Shown: positions 5,385 to 63,838, counted from the stretch's first letter. The stretch: 64,000 nt of DNA from IMGVR_UViG_3300042350_004191:124001-188000, one strand, 5' to 3'. The notes: a model not told the origin generated them from the letters alone. Translations and numbers: made by a program.

Positions 5385-5420
5385 TTTATTGATTATTTAA
5401 AATATTGTTTAAATACACAT

Positions 5421-5576
5421 ATGGAATCAAATGATCAAAAAATAGATAAAGATCATGCAGAGATTTTAATTGCTCGTTTACAAGCTCAAAGAAATGATGC
5501 TTTAAATCAGGTTGTTACTCTAGAAACAGAACTTATAAAAGCCCAAAAGCTTATAGGAGAATTGCAAAAAAAATAA
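5421..5576 (+). CDS. Small coiled-coil protein (51 aa), possible fibre assembly factor
   Basis: Not in ORF track. MESNDQKIDKDHAEILIARLQAQRNDALNQVVTLETELIKAQKLIGELQKK; TAAATA motif 5 nt upstream of ATG. Confidence 0.65.
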   Translation: MESNDQKIDKDHAEILIARLQAQRNDALNQVVTLETELIKAQKLIGELQKK

Positions 5577-5596
5577 AATATCCATAGGTATTTCAG

Positions 5597-5603
5597 ATAA
5601 ATA
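5597..5603 (+). promoter_or_regulatory. T4-type late promoter (ATAAATA) for lysis cassette
   Basis: Matches gp55-dependent TATAAATA core; 5 nt before ATG 5609. Confidence 0.6.
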
Positions 5604-5608
5604 CCTAT

Positions 5609-5878
5609 ATGAATAAATTGTTGTTTTTGACTGTTTTTTTGACTGGTTGTGTTTGTTTAAATCCAGAACACAAAAAAAGTGCTCCTCCTATTGCCAGTAC
5701 AGGTGAGGTTATTGAGTCTTTAGAAAAAACCAAAACTGAATTAGAGAAAGCTGGCGAATCTAATACTATTGTCGGTGACAAAGTAGAAAAAGCATTAACT
5801 TTGGCTGAAAGACTTGAAAATCTTTTAGAACAAATTGAAGAGACAAACTCTAAAATTGTAAAGGAACCAATTAAATGA
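5609..5878 (+). CDS. Lipoprotein, candidate outer-membrane spanin subunit
   Basis: Lipobox MNKLLFLTVFLTG-C followed by coiled coil; first gene of lysis cassette. Confidence 0.6.
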   Translation: MNKLLFLTVFLTGCVCLNPEHKKSAPPIASTGEVIESLEKTKTELEKAGESNTIVGDKVEKALTLAERLENLLEQIEETNSKIVKEPIK

Positions 5879-6390
5879 AAAAAATAATTCCATTAATTAT
5901 ATTATTAACATTAAGCACTACAAGTTTCGGTCAATTTTGGAAACCAAAACCAAAAGCTACACCAAAGCCTACTCCTGTAGTTGTTGAAAAAACAAAAACG
6001 CCTGTTCAAGATGCTAAATTAATTGTCAAAGAATTAAAAAATGAATTAAATTTAGCAAAAACAGAAAATACAAAGTTAAAAGAAAATTTAACAAAAGCAA
6101 AATCTGATTTAAATAACAGTTTTGTTCAAATTGACAAACTTAAAAAAGACATTGATACATTAAAAGAATGGGGTGTTGTCCAACAAGCAGAAGCTCAAAA
6201 GTGGCTACAAAAATATACCGATGCAGTTAAAAGATATCATAGATTAAAGTTAATCGCTGCAATCATAGCCGCTGCTGGTGGTGTATTATTGGGTTTACAG
6301 TTTATGAACATGGTTCCTCCACCATATAATTTATTAGTACCTATCGGTGGTGCTAGTTTATTTGCAATATTAGTCTGGTTATTTTTATAA
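5875..6390 (+). CDS. Membrane-anchored coiled-coil protein, candidate inner-membrane spanin subunit
   Basis: N-terminal signal/TM segment, Pro/Lys linker, long heptad region, two C-terminal hydrophobic helices; ATGA-type overlap with lipoprotein gene. Confidence 0.5.
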   Translation: MKKIIPLIILLTLSTTSFGQFWKPKPKATPKPTPVVVEKTKTPVQDAKLIVKELKNELNLAKTENTKLKENLTKAKSDLNNSFVQIDKLKKDIDTLKEWGVVQQAEAQKWLQKYTDAVKRYHRLKLIAAIIAAAGGVLLGLQFMNMVPPPYNLLVPIGGASLFAILVWLFL

Positions 6391-9099: not shown

Positions 9100-9361
9100 T
9101 TTTCTTTTTCTTTAATTTGTTTTTTGATAGCTTTGGTAGTTTTAAATTTTTATTGGATAAAGATTGTTGATTAATAAGTTCAGGAAAGTTTCTTTTCTGT
9201 ATAGCACCCTTAAAAGGTAATCCATGGTAGCCCGTAGAATAAGAATCTTGATTTTGTAATTGATTACCAGTTTGTATAGAAGCTGATGGTAATGAACCAT
9301 AAACACCAGCAACATCCATTTCTTCTATAACACTTAAAATAATTTGTTGTAATTCATTCAT
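9077..9361 (-). CDS. Hypothetical protein with basic C-terminus
   Basis: 94-aa ORF divergent from uvsY; TATAAT 6 nt upstream. Confidence 0.6.
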   Translation of the reverse strand: MNELQQIILSVIEEMDVAGVYGSLPSASIQTGNQLQNQDSYSTGYHGLPFKGAIQKRNFPELINQQSLSNKNLKLPKLSKNKLKKKKNGKQKQK

Positions 9362-9381
9362 AACTGTATTATAATATATTT
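9347..9381. promoter_or_regulatory. Bidirectional promoter with palindromic -10 (TATTATAATA)
   Basis: + strand TTGTAA(9347)-17-TATAAT(9370)-6-ATG(9382); - strand TATAAT(9373-9368)-6-ATG(9361). Confidence 0.7.
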
Positions 9382-9777
9382 ATGGATAATTTGTTCGAAG
9401 AGTATGAAAAAGAAATATTTTCTGATACAAAAATTGACGAATTAAATCTTTTAGAAAAACAATTACAGTTACCAGCCATAAAACATAAATGGGTTGCAAG
9501 ATTAATTACCCACAAAAGGAAAGTAAACAATCTTGAGAAAAAAAGAAAAGAGATTAAAGAAATAGTTTTATCTAAAATGAGCGATATCCCCAAAGGAATA
9601 CCAAAAAAATTATTAGATGCTAAAATTGACACAACCGAAGAGATTCAAAAGATAGACGAAGAAATAGAAAAACATAGTATAATGATAGAATATTTGGAAA
9701 AAGTTGAACAAATATTTAAATCTATGAGTTACGATCTTAAAAATATTATAGATATTAATAAATTAGAAACTACATGA
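9382..9777 (+). CDS. uvsY: UvsY-like recombination mediator
   Basis: 131-aa helical protein, D.KIDELNL...QLPAIKHKW...IEYLEKV...MSYDLKNIID; directly upstream of uvsW. Confidence 0.75.
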   Translation: MDNLFEEYEKEIFSDTKIDELNLLEKQLQLPAIKHKWVARLITHKRKVNNLEKKRKEIKEIVLSKMSDIPKGIPKKLLDAKIDTTEEIQKIDEEIEKHSIMIEYLEKVEQIFKSMSYDLKNIIDINKLETT

Positions 9778-11201
9778 TAAAAATTAAATTTAGCGGTAAA
9801 AAGAAAAACCTCCTGCAATTAGAAGGAGATCCTTCTTTTATAGCATTATTAAGAGAAAGATTTTCTGTTCAGAATCCAGCATATCGTAGCAATAATCCAT
9901 TTGTACAACCTAGATTATATTGTATAACTCCATCAGGTAAATTTGAGATAGGTCTTCTTAAAGAAATATCTAATGCAATAGCAAACGAAGGTTTTGGTGT
10001 AGAAATTGAAGACGATATTAAAAAAGTATTCAGTCCTATAAATGTTGAAACTTGTTTTAATTTAATTCCATTAAATATGGATTATAGAGATTATCAAGAA
10101 CAAGCAATTAAGCAAACTATTGCACATGGAAGGGGTGTTATTATTTTACCTACAGCAAGTGGTAAAACTTATGTTATGGCAGGATTGATTAAAAACATCA
10201 AACTTATGTTGAATAATCCAGATGCCAAAACTTTAGTATTAGTTCCTTCGATACAATTAGTGGAACAGACGTATAAAGATTTTTTAGATTACGGATTAAC
10301 TGATATAACAAAATGGTCTGGTAAAAATAAACCAGACTTTGAAAATTCTAAAATTATTATAGCTGGTACACAAATATTATTAAGCAAAACCACTGACTTA
10401 TCTATTCTATCACAAATTGACCTGTTCTTATGTGATGAGGTTCACGGAATTAGGAAAGGAAACAGTATTAATAAGATTTTTAATTTGTTAGATACACCAT
10501 ATACGTTTGGATTTACAGGCACAATGCCCCCTTCTCTCATAGATCAATGGAATATAATTGGAAAATTCGGACCCATAAATTATGAAGAAAAAACCAAAAC
10601 ATTAGAACAAAAAGATTATATTGCAACATTTAAGATCATAATTTTAAGAATAAAACACGATAGCTTACCATCACATATCGCAGTTCCTGATCGATCATTG
10701 GAGTCTTTTCAAAGAGAATTAGAATTTTTATTACAAAATAAAAAAAGAAATGAAATGATCTGTAATTTAGCTAATAAACTACAAAATAATACTATCATAA
10801 TGGTTGATAGAATTGACCATGGAGTAGTTTTGACTAATATACTGCGTAATATTACAAAAAGACCCCATTATTTCATTCAAGGATCTACAGAAATTGAAGA
10901 AAGAGAGAATATAAGAAAACTCATGAATGAAAAAAACGATGTAATTGTTGTGGCTATGTCAAAAATATTTAGTACGGGTATTAATATACCTAATTTACAT
11001 AATATAATTTTTGCTTCTGCTGGTAAAGCTAAAATTAAAATTATGCAATCTATTGGAAGAGCACTAAGACTACATCCCAATAAAAAAGTTGCAAATATCT
11101 TTGATATAAGCGATAATACAATATATAGTCGTAAACATTTAAAACAAAGATTAGACTTATATGATAAAGAAAATTATTTATATGAAATAAAAGACCTATG
11201 A
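9774..11201 (+). CDS. uvsW: UvsW SF2 DNA helicase
   Basis: RDYQ, PTASGKT, DEVH, GFTGT, FSTGINIPNL, QSIGRALR. Confidence 0.92.
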   Translation: MIKIKFSGKKKNLLQLEGDPSFIALLRERFSVQNPAYRSNNPFVQPRLYCITPSGKFEIGLLKEISNAIANEGFGVEIEDDIKKVFSPINVETCFNLIPLNMDYRDYQEQAIKQTIAHGRGVIILPTASGKTYVMAGLIKNIKLMLNNPDAKTLVLVPSIQLVEQTYKDFLDYGLTDITKWSGKNKPDFENSKIIIAGTQILLSKTTDLSILSQIDLFLCDEVHGIRKGNSINKIFNLLDTPYTFGFTGTMPPSLIDQWNIIGKFGPINYEEKTKTLEQKDYIATFKIIILRIKHDSLPSHIAVPDRSLESFQRELEFLLQNKKRNEMICNLANKLQNNTIIMVDRIDHGVVLTNILRNITKRPHYFIQGSTEIEERENIRKLMNEKNDVIVVAMSKIFSTGINIPNLHNIIFASAGKAKIKIMQSIGRALRLHPNKKVANIFDISDNTIYSRKHLKQRLDLYDKENYLYEIKDL

Positions 11202-11977
11202 AAAAGAAAACTAAAGACAAAACCCCTAAGAAAAAAAATATAATAAAAAAAACTATTAAAAAAAACATTTCTAAAAGCAAAGAACTCAACGAAGTTAAAA
11301 CAAAACCTATAGTAAATAAAAAACCAAAAAAAAGAAGAAGAAAATTAGAAGAAAACATAGACGAACTTGCGGAATATGAAGATCATCTTCTCACAGAAGA
11401 AGATTTTGAACAAGAATTAGAATTAAGTTTAAAAAAACGTCTTGGATATAGCGAAGAAGATGAATTAGAAGAAACAGAAGAAGTAGAAGAACCCGAAGAA
11501 GTAGAGGAAGTAGAAATTTTAGGGGTTCCTTATAAAAACAAAAGACCAAAGGTTCCAAAAGAAAAATTTTATGTTGATCCCAAACATTTTGATGATGAAA
11601 TTGTGAAATATTATGAATCTGGTGTTATATCAAATGATTTAGCTGAAATGGTTAGTAAGATTGCCAACAAATTAAGCTTTTCATCAAATTTTGCGGGTTA
11701 TACGTATAGAGAAGAAATGGTGGGAGATGGTATTGTTCGTATGTTTAAAGCACTAATGTCAAAAAAATACGACAGAGAAAAAGGAACCAACCCATTTTCT
11801 TACTTTACAAGAATCGCCTTCAATGCTTTTAGAAATAGAATTAAAAAAGAAAAACACATTCACGAAGCACAAGAAAGATATCAACAAGAATATATGATGG
11901 TATCCGAAGGATATACTAATTTACTAAAAAATAACCAAATTAGTATAACAAAAGATTTATTAGATAGATATGATTGA
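11198..11977 (+). CDS. 55: Late-transcription sigma factor gp55 with long charged N-terminal extension
   Basis: FYVD...KIANKLS...NFAGYTYREEMVGDG...NPFSYFTRIAFNAFRNRIKKEK; precedes gp47 as in T4-like phages. Confidence 0.88.
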   Translation: MKKKTKDKTPKKKNIIKKTIKKNISKSKELNEVKTKPIVNKKPKKRRRKLEENIDELAEYEDHLLTEEDFEQELELSLKKRLGYSEEDELEETEEVEEPEEVEEVEILGVPYKNKRPKVPKEKFYVDPKHFDDEIVKYYESGVISNDLAEMVSKIANKLSFSSNFAGYTYREEMVGDGIVRMFKALMSKKYDREKGTNPFSYFTRIAFNAFRNRIKKEKHIHEAQERYQQEYMMVSEGYTNLLKNNQISITKDLLDRYD

Positions 11978-20350: not shown

Positions 20351-20355
20351 GCGAT

Positions 20356-22785: not shown

Positions 22786-22809
22786 TTTTTAGTATTTTAG
22801 TGATATAAT
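22782..22809 (+). promoter_or_regulatory. Sigma70-type promoter
   Basis: TTGATT-16-TATAAT with TG extension, 11 nt before ATG 22821. Confidence 0.6.
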
Positions 22810-22820
22810 ATTATACAAAC

Positions 22821-45682: not shown

Positions 45683-46036
45683 TTATTTATTAATTTGTTT
45701 TGATATTTCAGCCAGAACTACCCCAACGTAATTGGGTCTTAAATATTTTATAAGCGTTTTTGATTTTATTTTCTCAAAGGGGTCTAAAACACTATTATAT
45801 AAACATATTAACCACCACAAATTCATATTACCATAAATTCTATGAGATATGGAGTACCATGTATCAGTGTAGTCTGATATATATTCTCCTTCCAATTCAC
45901 TGTTATTTGACGGGAAAATTGATATATTTTTTAATAAATTAAAAAAACGAAACCCTTGGTCATTTTCGTATATATTAAAAAAATTTTCGTAACTAAAAGA
46001 ACTACTATTAATTTCTGGTATATCTGTTTTTCTCAT
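45683..46036 (-). CDS. 53: Baseplate wedge gp53-like (LysM-like)
   Basis: DTWYSISHRIYGNMNLWWLICLYNSVLDPF. Confidence 0.75.
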   Translation of the reverse strand: MRKTDIPEINSSSFSYENFFNIYENDQGFRFFNLLKNISIFPSNNSELEGEYISDYTDTWYSISHRIYGNMNLWWLICLYNSVLDPFEKIKSKTLIKYLRPNYVGVVLAEISKQINK

Positions 46037-50100: not shown

Positions 50101-50224
50101 TTCGAATTAACTGTAAATCTTGATCGTTGACAAATATCTTTACAAGAACATCTAAAGGATTTTCCTTTAATCCCTTTTCTGTAAATTCTTTTATAAAGCT
50201 TTCTATGTCAGGATTCGCTACCAT
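47096..50224 (-). CDS. Tape measure protein (gp29-like)
   Basis: 1042 aa, helical, Gly/Ala-rich hydrophobic repeats (IPxIG...VPGVGT), IIINNNN near C-terminus; follows gp26-like genes. Confidence 0.75.
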   Translation of the reverse strand: MVANPDIESFIKEFTEKGLKENPLDVLVKIFVNDQDLQLIRRDFKRNILEKLVKKWKTLTDNVENSSERATEIYEKLNTLIQKVQTKDKEVTDIQAKSSKESPRLVEQPKQPVKDTNVQTDFNFLTDYQNIFSDIFSKIKEAYQKKNTEETTDVETLNNKNILKNQKFDLSDTLKSFIFDIKNIFNLNNENNNNLIGNLVNVLDLQKNNTLEFIKANNENPTNNTQTTSEEQKLFENKPTETIITFSTQTSDFLSKLVDKILKEKSEETSNVTIQQGGGLFGGLFGGLLNGLGGVAGLIGGAMAAIGGIGAITSFYWPEIKNYISEKFGDKAAETFDKFQGVVNAMSKFFTMGGLQMTFGNAFKTVGTFFGSISEKLATYATQMFSGVFDNIIGESAEVGGKVAGSTVGRNLKGLLARGAGLLLKGVSLTALKAIPLIGTVISFGQAWARFREGEYMQGLIDIAAGVTGLVPGVGTALSIGLSLLNTFIDLKGGEEKEQKAETGLSITAMLMKAVGWVAKIGSKLKFIPVIGSLLSFGLAWGRFQQNDILGGVLDIVSGIAAFVPGVGTTLAIGIDILNSVLDYQQGSDTSTGKASIMGNWFGSFYKYLRESYLVGTLIKAGEGLYSLFTGNIREGLELINELPFFGSVAGTFLSILDAFETTTDSKTGVTTTKFSFTKLADNLKKNLYKNLVNFFPEGFGIKSWFASMFGYTYDEKTKELVENNAPISEIKQPKMSGVEKNVIRNLPTEYNEKDETELKDNAKGLISNRKELEASIEEEKNKNFISRDDRKIEMLERQRENILESQKALNYKLKRYEELKEGKQVTTAEDLGVLPETELDKQISLIEEKIEKISQSRDRTKGQKLNLLRQELQELMDKKNKEVIEPEKANFYTDDKKLSNMLLEDTAFEGPSKSSFIEKRFDSKDGKIILDRSGNAIQLSSDDTIFASKKGDAVDKTFINLTNSVENLSKKMERLLMSKEIDMLNQRRNPEIDNTPTEPIIINNNNGSMENASEKVKISGGRDEIYLSRTEFLRSNTYGRF

Positions 50225-50229
50225 AATAA

Positions 50230-50236
50230 TATTTAT
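50230..50236 (-). promoter_or_regulatory. T4-type late promoter (ATAAATA)
   Basis: 5 nt upstream of tape measure ATG. Confidence 0.6.
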
Positions 50237-50256
50237 GGCCGATTACTGTTATAGTG

Positions 50257-52781: not shown

Positions 52782-53321
52782 TTATTCTACTCTCCAGTAT
52801 TGGTAAGCAATAGTAGCTGGAACTGTGACAATATCACCAGCAGTGCCAACATTCAGTGTCATTTCTCCCAAATTAGTAATATAGCAACCATAGAGATGAT
52901 ATCTTCTAAGTCTGTTACCATTTTTACCAATCAAGTCGAGAGTTGTAACACCTTCATCACCAGCGGGAATAGAATATTCTCCGGTGCTGGTTTCATCATC
53001 AAAGATGCTCTTCATCCAATCTTCAAGTTTGTCACGGACATCAAGCTCTGCATCCATTCTCATAGTAACCTGCCATGCGTTACTATTTGGATACTGAACC
53101 GTACCGGGAACATTGAATTGAAGTCCCATATAAGGAACTTGAATGTTGTTTATTGTCTTGCTAGGGAGTGTTGTTGATTCGATGTAAAGCAAATCATCAT
53201 CGTTGAAGAAGTTTGCTCCACCGAATGCAATTACTCTAAAAAGATTTTGTCTGAAGAAATCTTTTCTACCAGCAACTTCGTGGAAGTTTCTAATGCCTTG
53301 TTGATCTAATATTCCTGCCAT
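52782..53321 (-). CDS. 19: Tail tube protein gp19
   Basis: RQNLFRV, STTLPS, VPYMG..FNVPG, WQVT, LEDW, YHLYGCY, TIAYQYW. Confidence 0.88.
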   Translation of the reverse strand: MAGILDQQGIRNFHEVAGRKDFFRQNLFRVIAFGGANFFNDDDLLYIESTTLPSKTINNIQVPYMGLQFNVPGTVQYPNSNAWQVTMRMDAELDVRDKLEDWMKSIFDDETSTGEYSIPAGDEGVTTLDLIGKNGNRLRRYHLYGCYITNLGEMTLNVGTAGDIVTVPATIAYQYWRVE

Positions 53322-53326
53322 AATTT

Positions 53327-53333
53327 TATTTAT
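53327..53333 (-). promoter_or_regulatory. T4-type late promoter (ATAAATA)
   Basis: 5 nt upstream of tube ATG. Confidence 0.6.
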
Positions 53334-53348
53334 CCTTTTATTCTATAA

Positions 53349-56045
53349 TTAGTTGATTAATGCATCTAAGTCTGTACCAGTTCTGGTAGCAACGAAGTCA
53401 GCCAAGATAAATTCAGCGGCTCTAACAGGTTGAATATATATTGCAACTCTGAGTTCGTTTCTATCGATTGTGTCTGGTGTGTTATTTCTTTCATCACAGA
53501 TAATTCTGTAATCATAGATGCCTTCTCTTGTCTTTGCTCTTTCGAATAAAGGTGTTAATCTAAGAACAACTCTGTTTCTTGTTGTGATTGTATTTGGTTC
53601 AAATACAAATCTATTTAAGATAGTTGTTGTGCTCTTTTCTAACCATAAGAAGAGGTTTCTTACATTCAATCTATCGAATGCTGTTTGATAATTTATGAAT
53701 GTTTTTTGACCATAAACTACCATACCTTCTCTTGGGAAGTTAACGATAGGATTGTAGGAATGTCTATAAAGAAGATCTCTTTGTCTTTGATTTGGGTTGA
53801 GTGCTAGATCTACAACGCCAGTCAATCTTCCATAATTAAATCCTGCTGGAGCTAACCATGGTGCTCTTCTTCTGGTATTGAGGAGAACTCTACCAGCAAA
53901 GCCTGATGGTGGCAACCAAACAAATTCGTCTGAGGCTGCATCATAACGTCTCATCCAGTTTGCATATGTTGCCATGTATGTTGAGCGACCAATTTTTGCA
54001 TAAAGCACATTCAGAGGTCTTAAAACATCATCAACGAAGTTGAATGTTCTTGAATCGGCTATTTTAGCGTTTTTGCCTTTGACAAAAACATACCTCAATG
54101 GATCAGAAATAAATACGTGATTTTTTCTATTTTGTGCATAATTTCTGAATTTTCTCTGAACATCAACGTAAGCTTCTCTTACGACATCAAACTCTTGGTA
54201 ATAAGCTCTCCAGTTCTTAGGAATGACTTTAAGATTGTTGACATCGACATCTCTTGTGTCATCAAAGTGACCCGCGAGATCTGAACCAACATATGGGTTA
54301 AATCTTGCAGCACTTAATGCTACGTTTATTGTGCCTAAACCAGCTTCACAAACAATGTCTATGAATGTACTTTCATTTTCAGTTAATTCATATGTTTGGA
54401 AAACTCTGTCTAATTTAAGACTGAGATCACCAATATTTTTGTTTTTATTATCAACTGATGTAGGTGAGAACAGACTGTGACACCAAATAGCTTTGGTTCC
54501 TTCAGCAACTCTTACCTTCTTGACAGGTCTACCAAATTGATCGATCCATACGCCTGTTTCAGATATGTTAGGATTAGTTACAAATTTAATTCTAGAATTG
54601 AGATTATTTTCAATTCTATTTTCGATGTTGAAGCTAACTAATCTTCCACCGCGAGGGTCATTTTGCTTTCTCTTGGCATACAATGAACCAGCATATGCTT
54701 CCACTGTGCTATAATCTAAAGTTATAGCATCCTGAAGGAAAGGTGAAGTGTTTAATCTGTATACAAACAGTTTCAAGGAATCATTGAATGCATCATCTGA
54801 GAAATCATAAGCAGGGAATCTTGACATTCTTTCAGAAACACTTTGGAATGTTACACTTGAATAAGACTCTGTTAATGTGAAGTTTAATCTTTCATCAGGA
54901 ATTCTATAGAAAGACTGACCGACATTATTTCCAGAATTAACTGCGAAAATTGATGTTACAGAACTAAAATCTGTATAAGGAGTATCATCTGAATTATCTG
55001 CAAGGGCAATGTAAAACCCTTCAAACATATCATTAACCCCTAATTTATCACTGTTGATGATAACAATACCAGCCTTACTTAAATCTTCTGGGCCATTGAT
55101 TGTTAATGCGTTTAATGATCTCTTATCATGATAGTTAAGATCATATGATATTACAGTTCCTACACCATTACTGTTACTTGAAACATAATTTGTCCAAGAA
55201 CTTAATGTGTTTAAATCTGTGTTTACTGTTGCCCAAGCAATAGGAGCACCGCCAACCAAGTTTTTATCTAACTTGTTGGCATCATTTATAAGCCCATTGT
55301 CAGCAGCAACAATTCCATCAATATAATCTTGAACTCTTTGATTAAAGTATGCTTGGATATTGAATGCTGTTAAAGGTCTTTGTACTACTTGTTGGTTTGG
55401 TAAAACAGCAGGACCTTGATATGCATTAGGAGCATATGGGAAATATTTATTGACTTCAGAAACATCACTAACTCTTAAATCATTAACTACGTCTAAGAAT
55501 AAAGCACTAGCTACTGTTCTGTTTAAAGTGAAGGTTTGGTTTGCTACTGTTGATACAGAACTTACTTGTGTACTCCATGTTACACTTCCTTCTCTGATGT
55601 ATTTATCGTATTGATTTTGGTCAAATTTAACAGATTTAGGAGGAAGAATGTAATATGCTTCTGCATCAGAATAAGTTTTACCGTGTGGTAAAACTGGAAA
55701 TACTAAGGCACTATAATGATTCTGAGGATCTTCTTCTCCTCCATTGGCACCATAGGGCATTCTTGTTACATGAACATCAGAACCAGTACTAACCAATTGT
55801 TCTACAGTATGGGAGAGATAACGCTCTGCGGCTGTTTCAGGTAAGCCGAAAACGGTATTAAATTGAGCCATGCTTGTGATTCTAACAACTTGTTCAGTAG
55901 GACCCTGTGAAGCGAAACCAGTAACAACTGCGGCTGGTCTAATTGCTGCACCTCCTCCACTAGGTAGTCTTGTTAAGTCAGTTTCAGTAATTTGAACTCC
56001 GGGTGATTCAATTCTTCTTGGTGTTTGTATAATTCTTGTTGCCAT
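53349..56045 (-). CDS. 18: Contractile tail sheath protein gp18
   Basis: SPGVQITETDLT, GFASQGP, PWLAPAGFNYG, YGQKT, FDRLNVRNLF, FEPN, CDERNNT, IQPVRAAEFI. Confidence 0.95.
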   Translation of the reverse strand: MATRIIQTPRRIESPGVQITETDLTRLPSGGGAAIRPAAVVTGFASQGPTEQVVRITSMAQFNTVFGLPETAAERYLSHTVEQLVSTGSDVHVTRMPYGANGGEEDPQNHYSALVFPVLPHGKTYSDAEAYYILPPKSVKFDQNQYDKYIREGSVTWSTQVSSVSTVANQTFTLNRTVASALFLDVVNDLRVSDVSEVNKYFPYAPNAYQGPAVLPNQQVVQRPLTAFNIQAYFNQRVQDYIDGIVAADNGLINDANKLDKNLVGGAPIAWATVNTDLNTLSSWTNYVSSNSNGVGTVISYDLNYHDKRSLNALTINGPEDLSKAGIVIINSDKLGVNDMFEGFYIALADNSDDTPYTDFSSVTSIFAVNSGNNVGQSFYRIPDERLNFTLTESYSSVTFQSVSERMSRFPAYDFSDDAFNDSLKLFVYRLNTSPFLQDAITLDYSTVEAYAGSLYAKRKQNDPRGGRLVSFNIENRIENNLNSRIKFVTNPNISETGVWIDQFGRPVKKVRVAEGTKAIWCHSLFSPTSVDNKNKNIGDLSLKLDRVFQTYELTENESTFIDIVCEAGLGTINVALSAARFNPYVGSDLAGHFDDTRDVDVNNLKVIPKNWRAYYQEFDVVREAYVDVQRKFRNYAQNRKNHVFISDPLRYVFVKGKNAKIADSRTFNFVDDVLRPLNVLYAKIGRSTYMATYANWMRRYDAASDEFVWLPPSGFAGRVLLNTRRRAPWLAPAGFNYGRLTGVVDLALNPNQRQRDLLYRHSYNPIVNFPREGMVVYGQKTFINYQTAFDRLNVRNLFLWLEKSTTTILNRFVFEPNTITTRNRVVLRLTPLFERAKTREGIYDYRIICDERNNTPDTIDRNELRVAIYIQPVRAAEFILADFVATRTGTDLDALIN

Positions 56046-56057
56046 ATGTTATGAAAA

Positions 56058-56110
56058 TATTTATCTTATTTAAGTACCAATTTACGTAAAATTATAAAAA
56101 AATGTAAATA
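56058..56110. promoter_or_regulatory. Divergent late promoters
   Basis: - strand ATAAATA (56064-56058) 12 nt before sheath ATG; + strand TAAATA (56105-56110) 7 nt before ATG 56118. Confidence 0.6.
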
Positions 56111-56117
56111 GTAGTAT

Positions 56118-56441
56118 ATGAAATCATATAATGAACTTTATACACAGTTACTTAGTGAATATCAAAATACAAATACGGATGTCCAAAATCCCAATTTTTT
56201 AAAATTACAAAATTATTTTAAGCAACTTGGCCAAAATATCGATCCTAAAACTATAGAAGGAATTCTAAAAACATTGGAAGATAAATCTGAAAATGTTACG
56301 CAAAATACAAATGCAACAGAAAACGAAGAAGACCAAAATCAACCAGAAGTTCCAAAAGAAAAACAAACTTCCCCTAATGTTAGTCCAGTAATGAATAACC
56401 CATTGAACCCTTTCAATAAAAATCAACAAGCAACAGTATAA
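56118..56441 (+). CDS. Hypothetical late protein
   Basis: 107 aa, Asn/Gln-rich; late motif upstream. Confidence 0.65.
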   Translation: MKSYNELYTQLLSEYQNTNTDVQNPNFLKLQNYFKQLGQNIDPKTIEGILKTLEDKSENVTQNTNATENEEDQNQPEVPKEKQTSPNVSPVMNNPLNPFNKNQQATV

Positions 56442-56444
56442 ATA
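56437..56444 (+). promoter_or_regulatory. T4-type late promoter TATAAATA
   Basis: Exact consensus 6 nt before ATG 56451. Confidence 0.7.
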
Positions 56445-56450
56445 TAATAT

Positions 56451-56735
56451 ATGTTACCAGAAAATTTCGATAATTTAGTAACTGAGCTTTTGGAAGAAGC
56501 CAAATGCACAGGACCAACGAAAAAAGCTTCATCTACAGCCAAGGGTAAAAAGTGGATGAAGTGTGTAAAAAACCCAAGTGGTGGTGGATATAAAAGAATA
56601 CATTGGGGTCAAAAAGGTGTTCGTGTAACTGGTAAATCCGGTAACACAAAACGTAAAAAATCATTTCGTGCAAGACATAAATGCTCTGGAGCAAAGGCTG
56701 GCACACCACGTTACCAAGCGTGTAAAGATTGGTAA
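56451..56735 (+). CDS. Small basic Cys-containing protein
   Basis: GKKWMKCV...KRIHWG...KKSFRARHKC...RYQACKDW. Confidence 0.7.
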   Translation: MLPENFDNLVTELLEEAKCTGPTKKASSTAKGKKWMKCVKNPSGGGYKRIHWGQKGVRVTGKSGNTKRKKSFRARHKCSGAKAGTPRYQACKDW

Positions 56736-56743: not shown

Positions 56744-57544
56744 ATGAAGTCAAAAAAAAGTAAAAAGAAACAGACAGACTCTGTTCAAAAAAGCCATTCT
56801 CAAAACCGTGAGGATACTTCTCCTTATGTATACCAAAGAGAAAAAATTAATTTTGAATTTGGTATTAGGGAACTACCGTGGACAAATAAACAAAAAGAAC
56901 TAATTGAAGCTATTTTAGATAAACATACAAGATGTGTTTTTATTGAAGGGCCAGCAGGTACATCAAAGACATTAACTGCTGTTTATGCCGCACTGAACCT
57001 TTTGAAAAATAAAAAAATTTCTGACATAATCTTTGTAAGAAGTGCTGTTGAAAGTGCTGATTCTAAAATAGGTTATTTACCCGGTTCTATTGATGAAAAA
57101 TTTGAAGCGTATATGGTTCCCTTTATGGAAAAACTTGAAGAACTTTTAGATAAAGGTGCATTGAATAGATTAAGACATGACGAAAGATTTAGTGCAACGC
57201 CTGTGAATTATATCCGAGGTTTACATTGGGCAGCAAAAACGATCATCGTTGACGAAGCACAAAACATCACATTCAGAGAATTGGTAACAACTATTACTAG
57301 AATGGGTGAATTTTCAAAAATTATTTTTTGTGGAGATCCTATGCAATCAGATTTACCAGAAGCAAAAGCTGGTGGTTTTTCTAAAATGTGTGATTTATTT
57401 TCAGATGATGAATGTAAAAAATACGGTATTCATCATTTTAGATTTACAAATGAAGACGTTGTACGATCTGAGTTTGTGAAATTTATTGTTAATCGCCTTG
57501 AAAATGAAAAAGACACTTGGAAACCAAAAAATGTAAGTAAATAA
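56744..57544 (+). CDS. phoH: PhoH-family ATPase
   Basis: GPAGTSKT, RSAVE, IGYLPG, YIRG, IVDEAQN, TRMGE, GDPMQSD, DVVRS. Confidence 0.93.
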   Translation: MKSKKSKKKQTDSVQKSHSQNREDTSPYVYQREKINFEFGIRELPWTNKQKELIEAILDKHTRCVFIEGPAGTSKTLTAVYAALNLLKNKKISDIIFVRSAVESADSKIGYLPGSIDEKFEAYMVPFMEKLEELLDKGALNRLRHDERFSATPVNYIRGLHWAAKTIIVDEAQNITFRELVTTITRMGEFSKIIFCGDPMQSDLPEAKAGGFSKMCDLFSDDECKKYGIHHFRFTNEDVVRSEFVKFIVNRLENEKDTWKPKNVSK

Positions 57545-57548
57545 TAGA

Positions 57549-57719
57549 ATGGATCAAAATCAACAAAAAGTAGATTATAACAAAGTATCAAACAGACCAG
57601 TTACATGTATTTATTGTGGTGCTACAGTTGTAGGAAGAGTTCAAAAAACACCACAAGGAGAACAAATAAAGTGGATTTGTGATAGATGTAATCAACTAGT
57701 AAAAGTAGGAAATGTATGA
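57549..57719 (+). CDS. Small zinc-ribbon protein (56 aa)
   Basis: Not in ORF track. MDQNQQKVDYNKVSNRPVTCIYCGATVVGRVQKTPQGEQIKWICDRCNQLVKVGNV; TAAATA 5 nt upstream; ATGA overlap downstream. Confidence 0.75.
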   Translation: MDQNQQKVDYNKVSNRPVTCIYCGATVVGRVQKTPQGEQIKWICDRCNQLVKVGNV

Positions 57720-58128: not shown

Positions 58129-58157
58129 TTGACCTTACAAGAAAATTCTAGTAATCT
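58129..58157 (+). promoter_or_regulatory. Sigma70-type promoter
   Basis: TTGACC-17-TAATCT, 8 nt before ATG 58166. Confidence 0.6.
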
Positions 58158-58165
58158 CGTTATAG

Positions 58166-58567
58166 ATGAAAAATCTTATAAGATCTATCTCTATTAATTT
58201 AATAGTTTCTGCTTTATTCGGATTGGCCAATGTACTGTTTGGTGGTAATTTTCTTTACGTATTTGCGTTTGCTTTTTTAATTCAATACGTACTTTACTCT
58301 GTAATAGCAACTATCATAATAAACTATTATAGAGAAAAAACAAAACAAATAGAATTAAATAAATTAGAAAATTTATCGACTATTCTTGAGTGTGCTTATT
58401 GTAAGCAAAAAAATTTATTAACATTTATACCTGAACAAAATGAAAGAACAGAGTTTATCTGTACTTCTTGTAATAAAGAAAACGCTGTGATTATTAATTT
58501 TACAGTTGCCAGAATCACAGATTCTTTGCCAATCAATTCACTTTTAACTGATGAAGACAAAAAATAA
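58166..58567 (+). CDS. Membrane protein with C-terminal zinc ribbon
   Basis: Two N-terminal TM helices; CAYC...CTSC. Confidence 0.7.
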   Translation: MKNLIRSISINLIVSALFGLANVLFGGNFLYVFAFAFLIQYVLYSVIATIIINYYREKTKQIELNKLENLSTILECAYCKQKNLLTFIPEQNERTEFICTSCNKENAVIINFTVARITDSLPINSLLTDEDKK

Positions 58568-59473: not shown

Positions 59474-59827
59474 TTATTTTTTACGTACAACAAAATATTT
59501 TGTACCCTTTCTTACTAAAAATAAATCTGTTCTTCCTAGAGATTTTTTAAAATCACCAGTTTCTTTTTCTATATTTCGTCTAAAAATTTTTGCTAACTCT
59601 TTTGCTACTGTAAGTGGAATTTTATCAAATTTTAAATTTTTATTCATTTTAAATCTTTTGATAATATAATGTGATCGTTTAATATTATCAGAATCAGGAA
59701 CAAAATTTAAACCTTTTTTACGGTCTATCGTATTTCTATTTAAAGACTGTGTGTGTTTTCTAGAATTTTTTGTAGGTTTTACAATATCAGATTTTTGGTT
59801 ATAAAAATTTTTAAAGCTAGAAATCAT
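59474..59827 (-). CDS. Basic hypothetical late protein
   Basis: 117 aa Lys/Arg-rich; exact TATAAATA (59840-59833) 5 nt upstream. Confidence 0.65.
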   Translation of the reverse strand: MISSFKNFYNQKSDIVKPTKNSRKHTQSLNRNTIDRKKGLNFVPDSDNIKRSHYIIKRFKMNKNLKFDKIPLTVAKELAKIFRRNIEKETGDFKKSLGRTDLFLVRKGTKYFVVRKK

Positions 59828-59839
59828 ATATCTATTTAT

Positions 59840-59870
59840 AAAAAAACTCCATCTTTTCAGATGGAGTTTT
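59840..59870 (-). terminator. Rho-independent terminator, possibly bidirectional
   Basis: - strand AAAACTCCATCT-gaaa-AGATGGAGTTTTTTT. Confidence 0.85.
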
Positions 59871-60768: not shown

Positions 60769-61614
60769 CTATTTAGGTACATTTTCATCAAAAAATGACT
60801 CTTTGTTTAAAATAAACTCTGCTTCCTTTTCCAAATCCAACGGTTTGATTATTTGATAATCTTTATTTTCAGGAAACCATACGATGTATAAGTCATCTAC
60901 TTTATAACCAGAATTTTTTTCGACTATTTTTTTATAAATGTGTAATTGTAAAGAATATTTACTCAACTCACAATCTTGTAAATGAGACAAACCATTTAGC
61001 ATAGTTTTTCCGTTGAATCCTTCAGTTTTGATCGATTGGTTGGTTTTATAATCAAAAATAGATAAGTTTTTTGTTTTTCTATTATATGAAAGATTATCAA
61101 TTGTACCACAAATTTTACTACCAACATCACCTACAACAAATTCTGATCTTATACAATAATATGATTCATCATACCATTTATAAAAATTTAAAAAGTTTTT
61201 AACCATGAAACGCATCGTTTCTCGATACTGTTCTTTCTTTTTTTCAGCATCCAATTCTTGCCCTTCTTGAAAAAGCATATAATGAAACCCGTCCATATCT
61301 AAAGACACAAATTTTTTATTTAAAAAGTTTTCAACATATTTGTGAAAATCAGTTCCTTTAAAACAAGCATATTCTTTTTTGAAATTCCATTCTTTTAAAA
61401 TATCTTCTACAGGTCTTCCTTGTTTAAAGGCTACATTTTTAGCCACACCCGCAGAATCAAATTCTTCTGCATAATTTTTGAGAAGTGTCGTAACCGAATA
61501 TTTGCAAAGTTCTCCATTTATTTTATATTTGTGATCTTTCTCGTAAAATTTTACTTTTTTAAAAGTCTCTTCGAGAAGTAAAAGGTCATCAAAAGTTTTT
61601 ATTGCTTTTAGCAT
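60769..61614 (-). CDS. PD-(D/E)XK exonuclease (RecB-like)
   Basis: HKY, SVTT, KGTDFHKYVE, CGTIDNL, IFDYKTN, YSLQLHIY. Confidence 0.82.
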   Translation of the reverse strand: MLKAIKTFDDLLLLEETFKKVKFYEKDHKYKINGELCKYSVTTLLKNYAEEFDSAGVAKNVAFKQGRPVEDILKEWNFKKEYACFKGTDFHKYVENFLNKKFVSLDMDGFHYMLFQEGQELDAEKKKEQYRETMRFMVKNFLNFYKWYDESYYCIRSEFVVGDVGSKICGTIDNLSYNRKTKNLSIFDYKTNQSIKTEGFNGKTMLNGLSHLQDCELSKYSLQLHIYKKIVEKNSGYKVDDLYIVWFPENKDYQIIKPLDLEKEAEFILNKESFFDENVPK

Positions 61615-61649
61615 CCAAAGAGTCTATCATAATTCGTCAACCAATGCAA
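61602..61649. promoter_or_regulatory. Overlapping divergent sigma70-type promoters
   Basis: + TTGCTT(61602)-17-TATCAT(61625); - TTGCAT(61649)-17-TAGACT(61626), 6 nt before ATG 61614. Confidence 0.6.
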
Positions 61650-62729
61650 ATATATTCACAAGAAAAATGGTCTGAAATTTTAACAAAATATCCTAAACCA
61701 GAAGATCTTATAAAAGAAGATATTTGGATTAAAACCAGAGGATTAGATCTTAAAAAAGAGATAACATTAGACCAAGCTAAAGATGATTTTAATTTATTAA
61801 AGTCGTTAGAAACAAATAATTTAATCAAAGAAAGAAATATCTTTTCAAGATATGATTATAAATGGGAATTGGGAAGCAAATATATAGACTCTTGTAATAT
61901 TGGTAACAAATCTTCGAATTATTTTCATCAAGCTACTCGTTGGAAGTGTGATTCGATTAACTCACCGTCACCAGAAAGAAATTGGAATGAAAAGAAGTTC
62001 TTTTTTACTTTATTAAACTCTCTGTGGTCATTAAAGGTTAAAGAAGTTTCTTTGGATACATTAAGAACATGTATGTCCATGAGAAAATATGTAGCAAGCC
62101 AATTTAGACCATCTGCTGCAAAATGTTTATATGATCATTTTAAAGCTAAAAGAGTTTTAGATTTTAGTTCGGGTTGGGGTGATCGTTTATCAGCAGCAAT
62201 GAGTTCTGAAACTGTAGAACAATATGTGGGTATTGATCCAAACGAAGAGCTTTTTGAGAATTATAAAAGACAAATTAATTATTTTAATACAAATAAAAAT
62301 ATTCAACTTATAACTGCACCAGCAGAAGAAGTGTTTCAAAATTCACTAATAACAAAAGAAGATATCGAACCTGATCTTGTATTCACTTCACCACCATATT
62401 TTATAGTTGAAAGGTATTCAAAGAGCGATACTCAATCATGGGTTAGATATAAAAAAATAGATAAATGGTTAACGGGATTTTTGTTTCCTGTTATAGCTGG
62501 AAGCTTAAATATATTAAAGACCAATGGTATTTTGGCAATAAACATAAGTGATGTTTATTGTAATCATACTGTTAATCAAATTTGCGATCCTATGAATGAT
62601 TATATTCAAAGTCTAGGTCTAGCTGACAAGATTGAAAATATTAATTATAGAATGGCAAAGAGAACAAATAGTAAATCGAACAAACAAGGAATATTTGTAG
62701 AACCTATTTGGATATGGAGAAAAAAATGA
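61644..62729 (+). CDS. Amino (N4-C/N6-A) DNA methyltransferase
   Basis: QFRPSAAK, motif I LDFSSGWGDRL, GIDPN, motif IV FTSPPYF. Confidence 0.82.
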   Translation: MQIYSQEKWSEILTKYPKPEDLIKEDIWIKTRGLDLKKEITLDQAKDDFNLLKSLETNNLIKERNIFSRYDYKWELGSKYIDSCNIGNKSSNYFHQATRWKCDSINSPSPERNWNEKKFFFTLLNSLWSLKVKEVSLDTLRTCMSMRKYVASQFRPSAAKCLYDHFKAKRVLDFSSGWGDRLSAAMSSETVEQYVGIDPNEELFENYKRQINYFNTNKNIQLITAPAEEVFQNSLITKEDIEPDLVFTSPPYFIVERYSKSDTQSWVRYKKIDKWLTGFLFPVIAGSLNILKTNGILAINISDVYCNHTVNQICDPMNDYIQSLGLADKIENINYRMAKRTNSKSNKQGIFVEPIWIWRKK

Positions 62730-63064
62730 AATTTACAACCAGACAATTAAACAAACTTTATTCTGATTGCTTGAATTTATTAAAAAAGCAAAAACCAGAT
62801 TTTTTTCATTTAAGAAAAATGAGAGGTATATGGGGTCTGTGTTATGATGATAAATTAGAATTCGATTACAGATACTCAATAATTCCAACAATGTTTCATG
62901 AGTGTATTCATTTTTTATACCCCAACTGGTCTGAAACAAAGGTTTTACAAGCAGAATCTAGACTTATGAATTTTATTACACCATTACAAGTCGCGGAGTG
63001 TTTAAAAATTTTTGCTAACAAACTTTATCGAAGTGAGCTTAAAAAGTCATTTTTTAATGAGTGA
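62726..63064 (+). CDS. Small HExxH zincin-like protein
   Basis: WGLC...TMFHECIHFLYPNWSE; ATGA overlap with MTase. Confidence 0.65.
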   Translation: MKFTTRQLNKLYSDCLNLLKKQKPDFFHLRKMRGIWGLCYDDKLEFDYRYSIIPTMFHECIHFLYPNWSETKVLQAESRLMNFITPLQVAECLKIFANKLYRSELKKSFFNE

Positions 63065-63802
63065 ATGGAATGGACATTTTTCTATTGAGTAAGACTTCTT
63101 TGCTCTAAAGTTATTTTTATAGATATTAAAAAACGAAGCACTTGCTTTGTACCAACGATAAAGCAAACTGTTATCATACTTTTTAAATCTCAATTTAAAA
63201 TTTTCGCGTTTAAATGGAATTATTTGAGCAATAGGTGTTCCTTTTGGAATTAAACCAACGAAATCTTTTTTCAAAAAGAATGGAAAATTTACCGACAAAG
63301 GAAAATTATCAGTATCTACTAAACCTCCTAATGTTCTAAAAGGTAAGTCTTCATAATAAGAAGGATGTGTGAAGATACAAGACCAATTCGGCGGGGTTTC
63401 TATAATCCAAAAATTATTAAATTTAAATGGCATTTTTTCAAATTCTTTATGTATAGGATAGCCTTTAGATTGAATTTCCATATGAGGCTCGATCAATGGT
63501 AAATTATCCAAGGCCCACCGAAAATTTACACTCTGATTACCGCCATCATCAAATGTTCTTTCAACCCAAACATCACAAGGTAATGGAATATGATAACCAC
63601 ACGATATTAAATCTCTTACAGGCATACAATTTTTAATTGTAGCTGTGGGCATATTAAATTGATCTAAACTTTTTTCTTTTGTGTAATATAAAGAGATATT
63701 TTTTATCCAATCCGGCAATTTTGAATTTGCTGGATATGGTTTTTCTAAAAACTCAGCATATTCGTTTCTAACAGGATAAATTTTTAATCTGATACTAGAC
63801 AT
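63047..63802 (-). CDS. DUF6065-like protein (dUTPase-like fold)
   Basis: LPDW, TIKNCMP, KFNNFWIIETPPNWS, GLVDTD, IPKGTPIAQIIPFKR. Confidence 0.65.
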   Translation of the reverse strand: MSSIRLKIYPVRNEYAEFLEKPYPANSKLPDWIKNISLYYTKEKSLDQFNMPTATIKNCMPVRDLISCGYHIPLPCDVWVERTFDDGGNQSVNFRWALDNLPLIEPHMEIQSKGYPIHKEFEKMPFKFNNFWIIETPPNWSCIFTHPSYYEDLPFRTLGGLVDTDNFPLSVNFPFFLKKDFVGLIPKGTPIAQIIPFKRENFKLRFKKYDNSLLYRWYKASASFFNIYKNNFRAKKSYSIEKCPFHSLIKK

Positions 63803-63809
63803 GTGTGTA

Positions 63810-63838
63810 ATATTAAAACATTTTTATGTAAATGTCAA
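63810..63838 (-). promoter_or_regulatory. Sigma70-type promoter
   Basis: TTGACA-17-TAATAT, 7 nt before ATG 63802. Confidence 0.75.

What the first reader, a model, noticed from the sequence alone, without database searches (positions are those of the whole stretch)
5410..63838. Window-wide leaderless or near-leaderless promoter architecture for both promoter classes
Seen: sigma70-type -10 hexamers end 6-8 nt before ATG at 9382, 9361(-), 26745, 27237, 28463, 58166, 61614(-) and 63802(-). Late (A)TAAATA motifs end 5-7 nt before ATG at 5421, 5609, 56118, 56451, 57549, 41259(-), 45677(-), 50224(-), 53321(-) and 59827(-). I saw essentially no Shine-Dalgarno motifs. Known: transcription starts about 5-8 nt after these elements, and T4 itself uses SD-led mRNAs. 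Inference: many mRNAs begin at or next to the AUG, which constrains the host (TTGACA/TATAAT promoters, SD-independent translation) and could bypass host translational control.
Basis: partly seen in the sequence, partly recalled or inferred. Interest (0 to 1): 0.65.

Follow-up and report, generated by a model that had tools for sequence, protein, structure and literature searches.

The report
Promoters abutting start codons, no Shine-Dalgarno
In this uncultured T4-like lake phage both the host-type and the late promoters sit so close to the ATG that many messages should start at or within a few bases of the start codon, and no gene has a ribosome-binding (Shine-Dalgarno) site; this is known from Thermus phages, but I found no report of it for T4-type late promoters.

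Summary
All 18 listed sites are real, with the promoter element ending 5-8 nt before the ATG. Across the 210.6-kb genome, TAAATA ends 5-8 nt before 28 of 215 starts (dinucleotide shuffles: 2.4). TTGnnn-N16-18-TAnnnT ends 5-12 nt before 32 starts (shuffles: 3.3). Sigma70-like matches as such are no more frequent than in shuffles; only their position is significant.

No Shine-Dalgarno signal exists, even at operon-internal genes. Mean pairing energy to the anti-SD is -0.9 kcal/mol against -1.15 for control windows; the same script gives -5.4 for T4.

The spacing is kept in about 40 related lake contigs whose intergenic sequences have diverged. Three promoters fill the whole gap between a terminator hairpin and the ATG. 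A gp55-type late sigma gene lies in the window. Late motifs precede structural genes and -35/-10 promoters precede replication genes.

In controls, T4 has the motif 26-28 nt upstream, known-leaderless phiYS40 peaks at 6 nt, and pelagiphage HTVC008M at exactly 5 nt.

Leaderless or near-leaderless first cistrons are therefore the best reading (about 0.7). No RNA data exist, so start sites remain inferred, and the host is undetermined.

The parts
9347..9384 (+). Sigma70-type promoter TTGTAA(9347-9352)-17-TATAAT(9370-9375)-6 nt-ATG 9382; the gene is UvsY-like.
9359..9373 (-). -10 TATAAT (9373..9368)-6 nt-ATG 9361, with no TTG at -35. It shares the palindrome ATTATAAT (9368-9375) with the divergent 9382 promoter; the intergenic region is only 20 bp.
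11198..11977 (+). gp55-like late sigma factor gene, the presumed reader of the TAAATA motifs.
   Evidence: 37% identity to HTVC008M gp55, E 2e-16; phrog_234, E 3e-25.
20342..20358 (+). Late motif TATAAATA-6 nt-ATG 20356 (methyltransferase-like gene).
22782..22823 (+). TTGATT-16-TG-n-TATAAT(22804-22809)-11 nt-ATG 22821 (glycosyltransferase); predicted leader of about 4-5 nt.
24093..24135 (+). TTGATT-17-GATAAT(24116-24121)-11 nt-ATG 24133 (DNA polymerase).
26710..26747 (+). TTGAAA-16-TAATAT(26732-26737)-7 nt-ATG 26745 (135-aa protein of unknown function).
27167..27239 (+). Terminator hairpin 27167-27201 (15 pairs plus a T run), then directly TTGCTT(27203-27208)-16-TAGACT(27225-27230)-6 nt-ATG 27237 (UvsX).
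28397..28465 (+). Terminator hairpin 28397-28422 (11 pairs, 6 GC, T run), then TTGACT(28428-28433)-17-TAATAT(28451-28456)-6 nt-ATG 28463 (gp41-type helicase). No spare bases are left for a leader.
   Evidence: the spacing is conserved in relatives.
29852..29867 (+). Variant motif TATAAGTA-5 nt-ATG 29865 (DHH phosphoesterase).
   Evidence: the TAAGTA class is enriched, 12 observed against 1.1 in shuffles.
31678..31720 (+). TTGACT-17-TAATAT(31701-31706)-11 nt-ATG 31718 (gp32-type ssDNA-binding protein).
5408..5423 (+). Late motif TTTAAATA-5 nt-ATG 5421.
5596..5611 (+). Late motif GATAAATA-5 nt-ATG 5609.
41257..41274 (-). Late motif TATAAATA-7 nt-ATG 41259 (568-aa protein).
45675..45691 (-). Late motif AATAAATA-6 nt-ATG 45677 (large terminase). 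The motif overlaps the end of the upstream gene.
50222..50237 (-). Late motif CATAAATA-5 nt-ATG 50224 (1042-aa protein).
53319..53334 (-). Late motif GATAAATA-5 nt-ATG 53321 (tail tube).
56043..56065 (-). Late motif GATAAATA-12 nt-ATG 56045 (tail sheath). The predicted leader is about 7 nt, and the 12-nt distance is kept in the six relatives that share its start codon.
56103..56120 (+). Late motif TGTAAATA-7 nt-ATG 56118.
56437..56453 (+). Late motif TATAAATA-6 nt-ATG 56451.
57536..57551 (+). Late motif AGTAAATA-5 nt-ATG 57549.
58129..58168 (+). TTGACC-17-TAATCT(58152-58157)-8 nt-ATG 58166.
59825..59870 (-). Terminator hairpin (59870..59843, 12 pairs) whose T run merges into TATAAATA (59840..59833)-5 nt-ATG 59827.
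61612..61649 (-). TTGCAT(61649..61644)-17-TAGACT(61626..61621)-6 nt-ATG 61614 (exonuclease).
63800..63838 (-). TTGACA(63838..63833)-17-TAATAT(63815..63810)-7 nt-ATG 63802.

Best explanation
**What the window is.** It is part of a 210.6-kb, 32% GC, deep-branching T4-like myovirus from lake water.

**Proposed mechanism.**
- Transcription units start at two kinds of promoter. Both are placed so that the element at the -10 position ends 5-8 nt (a minority 10-12 nt) before the ATG of the first gene.
- The first kind is host-sigma70-type, TTGACw-N17-TAwwwT, in front of replication and recombination genes.
- The second kind is a gp55-type late promoter, n(A/G)TAAATA with no -35 box, in front of virion and packaging genes.
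- RNA polymerase starts about 6-7 nt after such an element. The T4 late box spans -13 to -6.
- The first cistrons are therefore made as leaderless mRNAs (5'-AUG) or with 1-5 nt leaders. They would be translated without any SD pairing, presumably by direct 70S/initiator-tRNA binding to the 5' AUG.
- Downstream cistrons also lack SD. They are mostly overlapping or closely abutting the upstream gene (ATGA overlap in 29 genes) and would be translated by termination-reinitiation or SD-independent entry on A-rich, G-poor sequence.

**Shown:** the motif identity, spacing and enrichment; the absence of SD; the gene-class association; conservation in the clade; the presence of gp55.

**Inferred:** the start sites, the mode of ribosome binding and the coupling.
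For: **Spacing.**
- Sharp spacing peaks against shuffles, shifted windows and the reverse-complement motif.
- In unbiased 6-mer counts, TAAATA is the top hexamer 4-9 nt before gapped starts: 17 of 105, against 2 in each of two control windows.

**Promoter identity.**
- 0 of 28 late sites have a -35-like TTG, as in T4 late promoters.
- A gp55 homologue is present.
- The T4 late box position -13..-6 comes from PMC2988020.
- Late motifs precede tail tube, sheath and terminase. -35/-10 promoters precede UvsY, UvsX, helicase, gp32, polymerase and exonuclease.

**No room for a leader.** Terminator hairpins abut the promoters at 27167-27201, 28397-28422 and 59843-59870.

**Conservation in relatives.**
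- Helicase orthologues at 55-62% amino-acid identity keep TTGCwT-17-TATAAT-6..8-ATG although the spacer sequences differ.
- In 307-308 ORFs of relatives, TAAATA peaks at 5 nt and the composite promoter at 6 nt, with almost none beyond 12 nt.

**Start codons are secure.**
- 77 of 82 promoter-adjacent genes have no upstream alternative start. The in-frame stop is a median 9 nt upstream. The next in-frame ATG is a median 58 codons downstream.
- Orthologues align from residue 1.

**No SD.**

**Method controls.** T4 gives 26-28 nt plus SD. phiYS40, experimentally leaderless, gives a TANNNT peak at 6 nt.

**Start-site dinucleotide.** Position -1 is a pyrimidine in 72% of promoter-adjacent genes, followed by the A of the ATG, which is the usual start-site dinucleotide.
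Against: - There are no RNA data: no public RNA run holds the phage.
- Sigma70-like consensus matches are at background frequency in this AT-rich DNA, so some individual sites, especially those with weak -35 boxes, may be chance.
- With distances of 6-8 nt the T4 geometry predicts 1-3 nt leaders, not strictly 5'-AUG. Whether the host's ribosomes accept these is unknown.
- 49 of 105 genes with an upstream gap have no ATG-proximal element.
- The pyrimidine at -1 is also common at other genes (55-59%).
- Terminators leak, so read-through transcripts with long leaders may contribute.
Confidence: 0.7

Rival explanations
1. The ATG-proximal elements are real promoters, squeezed against the ATG only by genome compaction, because no SD spacer is needed in this host. 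Most protein would still be made from longer read-through or upstream-initiated polycistronic transcripts, through ordinary 30S SD-independent initiation. The 5'-AUG transcripts would be minor or poorly translated.
For: - All genes, including internal ones, lack SD, so SD-independent internal initiation must work in this host.
- Most genes sit in long same-strand arrays with short gaps.
- Distances of 10-12 nt at the polymerase, gp32 and sheath genes show that short leaders are tolerated.
Against: - Strong terminators lie directly before three of the promoters.
- The spacing distribution is sharply cut at 5 nt and peaks at 5-7. This fits selection for start at the AUG rather than mere crowding.
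- The Tenacibaculum phage PTm1 also lacks SD but keeps its promoter-like motifs 10-35 nt upstream.
Confidence: 0.17
2. The A/T-rich motifs next to the ATG are translation signals (AU-rich enhancers, S1 binding, or a Kozak-like context), or a by-product of AT-rich composition, and not promoters.
For: - Upstream regions are A-rich everywhere.
- TAAATA at 4-9 nt also occurs at 11 of 109 operon-internal genes.
- Sigma70-like matches overall are at the shuffle level.
Against: - Dinucleotide shuffles give about 10-fold fewer hits.
- The reverse-complement control is flat.
- A -35 box at exactly 16-18 bp cannot be a translation signal.
- The late motif is the known gp55 target and gp55 is encoded.
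- The motif classes sort by gene function.
Confidence: 0.06
3. The start codons are mis-assigned. The true starts would lie downstream, so the mRNAs would have ordinary leaders.
For: My gene caller prefers the first ATG.
Against: - The next in-frame ATG is a median 58 codons downstream. 77 of 82 genes have no alternative upstream start.
- Helicase and sheath orthologues align from residue 1.
- UvsX matches its family profile from position 1.
Confidence: 0.03

Closest known systems
Thermus phages phiYS40 and Lalka27a (experimentally leaderless middle/late transcripts)
   Same: - These are large AT-rich myoviruses in which most transcripts begin at the A or G of the start codon (bioRxiv 10.64898/2026.04.20.719267; PMC3594737).
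- My script finds the same signature in phiYS40: a TANNNT peak 6 nt before the ATG.
   Different: - The promoters differ (for example a TAGGGT late box) and there is no gp55-type TATAAATA system.
- The host phylum, Deinococcus-Thermus, is itself rich in leaderless genes.
- phiYS40 still shows SD pairing at many genes (dG -4.6 against -1.9). This phage shows none.
T4 late promoters (gp55/gp33/gp45, TATAAATA at -13..-6)
   Same: - The core motif is the same and there is no -35 box.
- A gp55 homologue is encoded.
- The motif is linked to virion genes.
   Different: - In T4 the motif lies 26-28 nt before the ATG, with an SD in between. Here it lies 5-8 nt before the ATG with no SD.
- The consensus is relaxed to n(A/G)TAAATA, and there is a TAAGTA variant.
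- gp45 was not detected by two searches, and gp33 was not searched for.
Pelagibacter myophage HTVC008M (Kyanoviridae)
   Same: - ATAAATAG-N4-ATG, a distance of exactly 5 nt, occurs at 8 genes, mostly late structural, in 100 kb.
- It shares the uvsY-uvsW-gp55-gp47-gp46 gene order and also encodes bS21.
   Different: - It keeps an SD signal at other genes (dG -3.9 against -1.75).
- Polymerase identity to any phage in the collection is at most about 31%.
- The arrangement does not seem to have been described. PMC7029224 reports that the cyanophage late-promoter methods failed on pelagimyophages.
Leaderless gene starts of Actinobacteria, Deinococcus and archaea (GeneMarkS-2 'leaderless' genome classes)
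   Same: A -10 (TANNNT) box ends 6-8 nt before the start codon and no SD is present. This rests on established knowledge and on Lomsadze 2018, as cited.
   Different: Here two different sigma specificities share the geometry in a virus. The non-first cistrons also lack SD, unlike in Actinobacteria.

Membership tests
Leaderless / near-leaderless mRNA architecture | The -10-position promoter element ends about 5-8 nt upstream of the start codon, far more often than chance. | tested here: met
   (28 against 2.4; 32 against 3.3); relatives.
Leaderless / near-leaderless mRNA architecture | The primary transcript 5' end is mapped at the start codon, or less than 5-10 nt upstream of it. | not testable with these tools
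   No RNA run holds the phage.
Leaderless / near-leaderless mRNA architecture | No Shine-Dalgarno sequence lies before the affected genes. | tested here: met
Leaderless / near-leaderless mRNA architecture | The start codon is AUG and is unambiguous. | tested here: met
   Caveat: the gene caller prefers ATG. Three promoter-adjacent GTG starts were seen.
T4-type late promoter system | A TATAAATA-like box at the -10 position without a -35 element. | tested here: met
   core TAAATA, preceded by A in 16 of 28 sites; 0 of 28 sites have a -35 TTG.
T4-type late promoter system | A gp55 late sigma factor is encoded. | tested here: met
   (window 11198-11977).
T4-type late promoter system | The gp33 co-activator and the gp45 sliding clamp are encoded. 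| tested here: inconclusive
   gp45 was not found with the HTVC008M protein or with PF02916. Divergence is likely. gp33 was not searched for.
T4-type late promoter system | The promoters precede late (virion and packaging) genes. | tested here: met
Canonical sigma70 (-35/-10) promoters | TTGACA-like and TATAAT-like hexamers are 16-18 bp apart and enriched before genes. | tested here: met
   Position-specific enrichment. The overall count is not above shuffles.
Bacteroidota-type promoters (TTG ... TAnnTTTG) | A TAnnTTTG box lies upstream of genes. | tested here: not met
   8 of 215 upstream regions, with no positional peak.

The most novel reading that the evidence does not exclude
A whole branch of aquatic T4-superfamily phages (this lake lineage, and independently pelagimyophage HTVC008M) may have moved gp55-dependent late promoters against the start codon, so that virion proteins are made from leaderless mRNAs. 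In this lineage SD has been purged from every gene. The phage-encoded bS21, which sits behind an early-type promoter, would then re-tune host ribosomes toward 5'-AUG/SD-less phage messages and away from SD-led host messages.
Probability: 0.2. Interest if true: 0.8.

Novelty: new variant of a known kind. Interest (0 to 1): 0.6.

Why it matters
- **T4-type regulation.** If start sites are confirmed, this would be the first T4-type regulatory system (gp55 late promoters) wired for leaderless expression.
- **Pelagimyophages.** It would explain why late promoters of pelagimyophages were missed by methods built on cyanophages and T4.
- **Annotation.** It gives a simple sequence rule, a promoter box ending 5-8 nt before the ATG. 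The rule could improve start-codon and operon annotation in a widespread group of uncultured lake phages.
- **Host.** It narrows the host to an organism with a canonical sigma70 whose ribosomes do not need SD.
- **Translation genes.** The phage also carries bS21, a tmRNA and 14 tRNAs. This makes it a candidate system for studying virus-directed selection of mRNAs by ribosomes.

Tried and rejected
- **RNA evidence.** The look-up of sequencing runs found 21 DNA runs, mostly labelled lake water or freshwater, and no RNA run. Read laying was therefore not used, because DNA contigs cannot show 5' ends.
- **Close relatives among cultured phages.** Megablast found nothing. Polymerase and terminase reach at most 31-34% identity.
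- **Host.**
  - A bS21 scan of bacterial genomes found nothing.
  - The nucleotide-sugar epimerase found only hits of 35% identity or less, biased to AT-rich genomes (Terriglobia, Pelagibacteraceae, SAR86). This is not informative.
  - The tmRNA is the ordinary one-piece type. That is weak evidence against an alphaproteobacterial origin, and phage tmRNAs need not match the host.
- **Bacteroidota host.** This was considered because of the missing SD. The TAnnTTTG box is absent. The Flavobacteriia phage PTm1 shows a different upstream architecture.
- **Generic sigma70 and terminator scans.** Total counts equal shuffles, so raw counts were rejected as evidence.
- **gp45.** The clamp was not detected.
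- **Pyrimidine at -1.** This is only weakly discriminating.
- **Higher-GC island.** Pfam on its proteins gave only DUF932.
- **Literature.** The searches found no report of leaderless transcripts in T4-like, cyano- or pelagimyophages. The library is incomplete, for example subscription papers on Syn9 start sites.


Full report
**What the window is.** The window is bases 124,001-188,000 of a 210,586-bp IMG/VR virus record that is estimated to be 99% complete. The genome is 32% GC and carries 14 tRNAs and a tmRNA.

- Its proteins mark it as a distant T4-like myovirus. They include a family-B polymerase, UvsX, a gp41-type helicase, gp46/gp47, UvsY, UvsW, gp32, a gp55 late sigma, a tail sheath, a tail tube and a large terminase.
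- No cultured phage is close. Polymerase and terminase reach at most 31-34% identity.
- The DNA is held only by metagenomes, mostly from lake water or freshwater, and no RNA run holds it.
- About 40 related contigs exist in IMG/VR, with 55-73% identity in the helicase.

**Checking the observation.**

- I read all 18 sites and each is as described. The eight -10 hexamers end 6-8 nt before the ATG. Seven of them have a TTG-type -35 box at 16-17 bp; 9361(-) has none. The ten nnTAAATA motifs end 5-7 nt before the ATG.
- I then called genes on the whole genome with a simple periodic Markov model, giving 215 genes, and asked whether the spacing exceeds chance.
- TAAATA ends 5-8 nt before 28 annotated starts. 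That compares with 2.4 +/- 1.6 (maximum 8) in 300 dinucleotide-preserving shuffles of the same upstream regions, and with 1-6 in shifted windows of the real sequence.
- The composite TTGnnn-N16-18-TAnnnT ends 5-12 nt before 32 starts, against 3.3 in shuffles.
- Within the window alone the figures are 11 against 0.8, and 9 against 1.1.
- A test that uses no annotation gives the same result. TAAATA is followed by an ORF-opening ATG at offsets 5-8 in 29 cases, against about 0.4 per offset in Markov simulations. The reverse-complement motif gives no peak.
- In unbiased hexamer counts, TAAATA is the most enriched word 4-9 nt before starts.
- One caveat matters. The total number of sigma70-like matches in the window equals that of shuffles (95 vs 96.2; 105 vs 104.5). 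Only their placement carries information.

**Shine-Dalgarno.**

- G is depleted (6-16%) at -14 to -6.
- SD-like cores occur in 11% of genes, against 12% in control windows.
- Mean pairing energy to the anti-SD is -0.90 kcal/mol, against -1.15 for control windows. For the 109 operon-internal genes it is -1.22 against -1.56.
- The same script gives -5.40/-1.43 for T4, -3.94/-1.75 for pelagiphage HTVC008M, -3.52/-1.77 for cyanophage P-HM1 and -4.59/-1.92 for phiYS40.

**What the elements are.**

- The TAAATA sites have the T4 late core. The base before it is A in 16 of 28 sites, and 0 of 28 sites have a -35-like TTG.
- A gp55 homologue lies in the window at 11198-11977.
- The late motifs precede the tail tube, sheath, large terminase and other large late-cluster genes. 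The -35/-10 promoters precede UvsY, UvsX, helicase, gp32, polymerase, gp46 and an exonuclease. That is the T4 programme.
- A variant, TAAGTA, is also enriched 5-10 nt before starts: 12 observed against 1.1 in shuffles.
- The T4 late box occupies -13 to -6 (PMC2988020). Distances of 5, 6, 7 and 8 nt (7, 8, 9 and 4 genes) therefore predict leaders of 0-3 nt.
- For sigma70 promoters, a 6-nt spacer puts +1 on the A of the ATG. This rests on established knowledge of start-site selection.

**Three further arguments support real, ATG-abutting promoters.**

1. *Packing.* Strong terminator hairpins at 27167-27201, 28397-28422 and 59843-59870 run directly into the -35 box or the late box. The space from terminator to ATG is exactly one promoter long.
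2. *Conservation.*
   - Many helicase orthologues at 55-62% identity keep TTGCwT-17-TATAAT-6..8-ATG, while the spacer sequences differ.
   - Over 307-308 ORFs of relatives, TAAATA peaks at 5 nt (13, 8, 5 and 4 at 5-8 nt).
   - The composite promoter peaks at 6 nt (11, 5, 3 and 5 at 6-9 nt), with almost nothing beyond 12 nt.
   - The sheath gene keeps a 12-nt distance in the six relatives that share its start codon.
3. *Secure start codons.*
   - 77 of 82 promoter-adjacent genes have no alternative upstream start.
   - The in-frame stop is a median 9 nt upstream, and the next in-frame ATG is a median 58 codons downstream.
   - Orthologues align from residue 1.

**Controls and comparators.**

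- T4 gives TAAATA at 26-28 nt, with SD in 72% of genes.
- phiYS40 has transcripts that are experimentally leaderless. It gives a TANNNT peak at 6 nt, so the method recovers a known case.
- Cyanophage P-HM1 has the late motif mostly at 20-27 nt.
- The cultured pelagiphage HTVC008M has ATAAATAG-N4-ATG, a distance of exactly 5 nt, at 8 genes in 100 kb, mostly late structural ones.
  - I found no description of this. PMC7029224 states that cyanophage methods for late promoters failed on pelagimyophages.
- The Flavobacteriia phage PTm1 also lacks SD, but it has no ATG-abutting boxes. An SD-less host alone therefore does not produce this architecture.

**Limits.**

- No start site is mapped.
- The feature is not universal. 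49 of 105 genes with an upstream gap of at least 18 nt have no element within 13 nt. A second sigma70 mode lies at 10-11 nt, predicting 4-5 nt leaders. Some genes outside the window have CA-rich leaders.
- Half of all genes are operon-internal. Overlaps such as ATGA occur in 29 genes, and most other gaps are under 10 nt. These genes must use coupling or SD-independent entry.

**Host.**

- The -35/-10 boxes are canonical, and the Bacteroidota TAnnTTTG box is absent. Yet translation must be SD-independent.
- Attempts to name a host failed.
- The phage carries bS21 behind an early-type promoter and a one-piece tmRNA.
- bS21 supports the anti-SD region of the ribosome. Its absence favours lambda cI leaderless mRNA in E. 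coli (PMC10491246). Phage bS21 has been proposed to bias ribosomes toward phage messages (PMC9723584).
- Any link to the architecture described here is speculation.

**Verdict.** The leaderless or near-leaderless reading is the best explanation (about 0.7) but remains an inference from geometry. Leaderless phage transcripts are known. Their combination with T4-type late promoters, and the total loss of SD, is a new variant of that kind.

Noticed in passing
G000:C1 9597-9809 (-), outside the window (L065:9597-9809): The phage encodes ribosomal protein bS21 (PF01165, 29.8 bits, above the cut-off). It sits behind TTGCAA-17-TACAAT, 13 nt before the ATG, which is an early-type promoter.
   Followed up: partly
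G000:C1 683-1144 (-), plus 14 tRNA genes outside the window: A one-piece tmRNA (Rfam RF00023, 143 bits; tag ADEEMLLAA) and 14 tRNAs are present. Together with bS21 they form a translation toolkit.
   Followed up: partly
G000:C1 about 14,500-33,200, outside the window: This is a compositional island of 41-46% GC in a 32% GC genome. It contains only small ORFs that my caller mostly rejects. The called genes within and beside it have CA-rich, G-poor upstream regions instead of ATG-abutting promoters. Pfam finds only DUF932.
   Followed up: partly
window 9359-9384: Divergent genes lie 20 bp apart and share one palindrome, ATTATAAT, that serves as the -10 box in both directions. Each copy is 6 nt from its ATG, and each -35 region lies inside the opposite gene.
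   Followed up: yes
Relatives L019, L021, L033, L038-L042, upstream of the helicase gene: An inverted repeat joins the -35 box to the bases just before the -10 box (for example GGTTGCA...TGCAACC, AGATTGCA...TGCAGTCT). The changes between relatives are compensatory. It could be a terminator overlapping the promoter, or an operator.
   Followed up: no
L059 and L060 (Pelagibacter phage HTVC008M, 1-100 kb): ATAAATAG-N4-ATG, with the late box exactly 5 nt before the start, occurs at 8 genes: tape measure, gp2, tail tube cap, baseplate wedge, tail completion and others. This suggests leaderless late mRNAs in a cultured SAR11 phage.
   Followed up: partly
window 29852-29859, 52763-52770 and 12 genome-wide sites: A second motif, (A/T)TAAGTA, lies 5-10 nt before starts (12 observed against 1.1 in shuffles). 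It is either a variant late promoter or a separate class.
   Followed up: partly
window 13750-20350: One same-strand array sits between gp47 and gp46. It holds four glycosyltransferase-like genes, a nucleotide-sugar epimerase and methyltransferase-like genes. It is a possible DNA or cell-surface modification module.
   Followed up: no
L078 (Tenacibaculum phage PTm1, 1-50 kb): A recurrent ATACATA-type motif lies 10-35 nt upstream of many genes. It may be this phage's own promoter. No SD signal is present.
   Followed up: no
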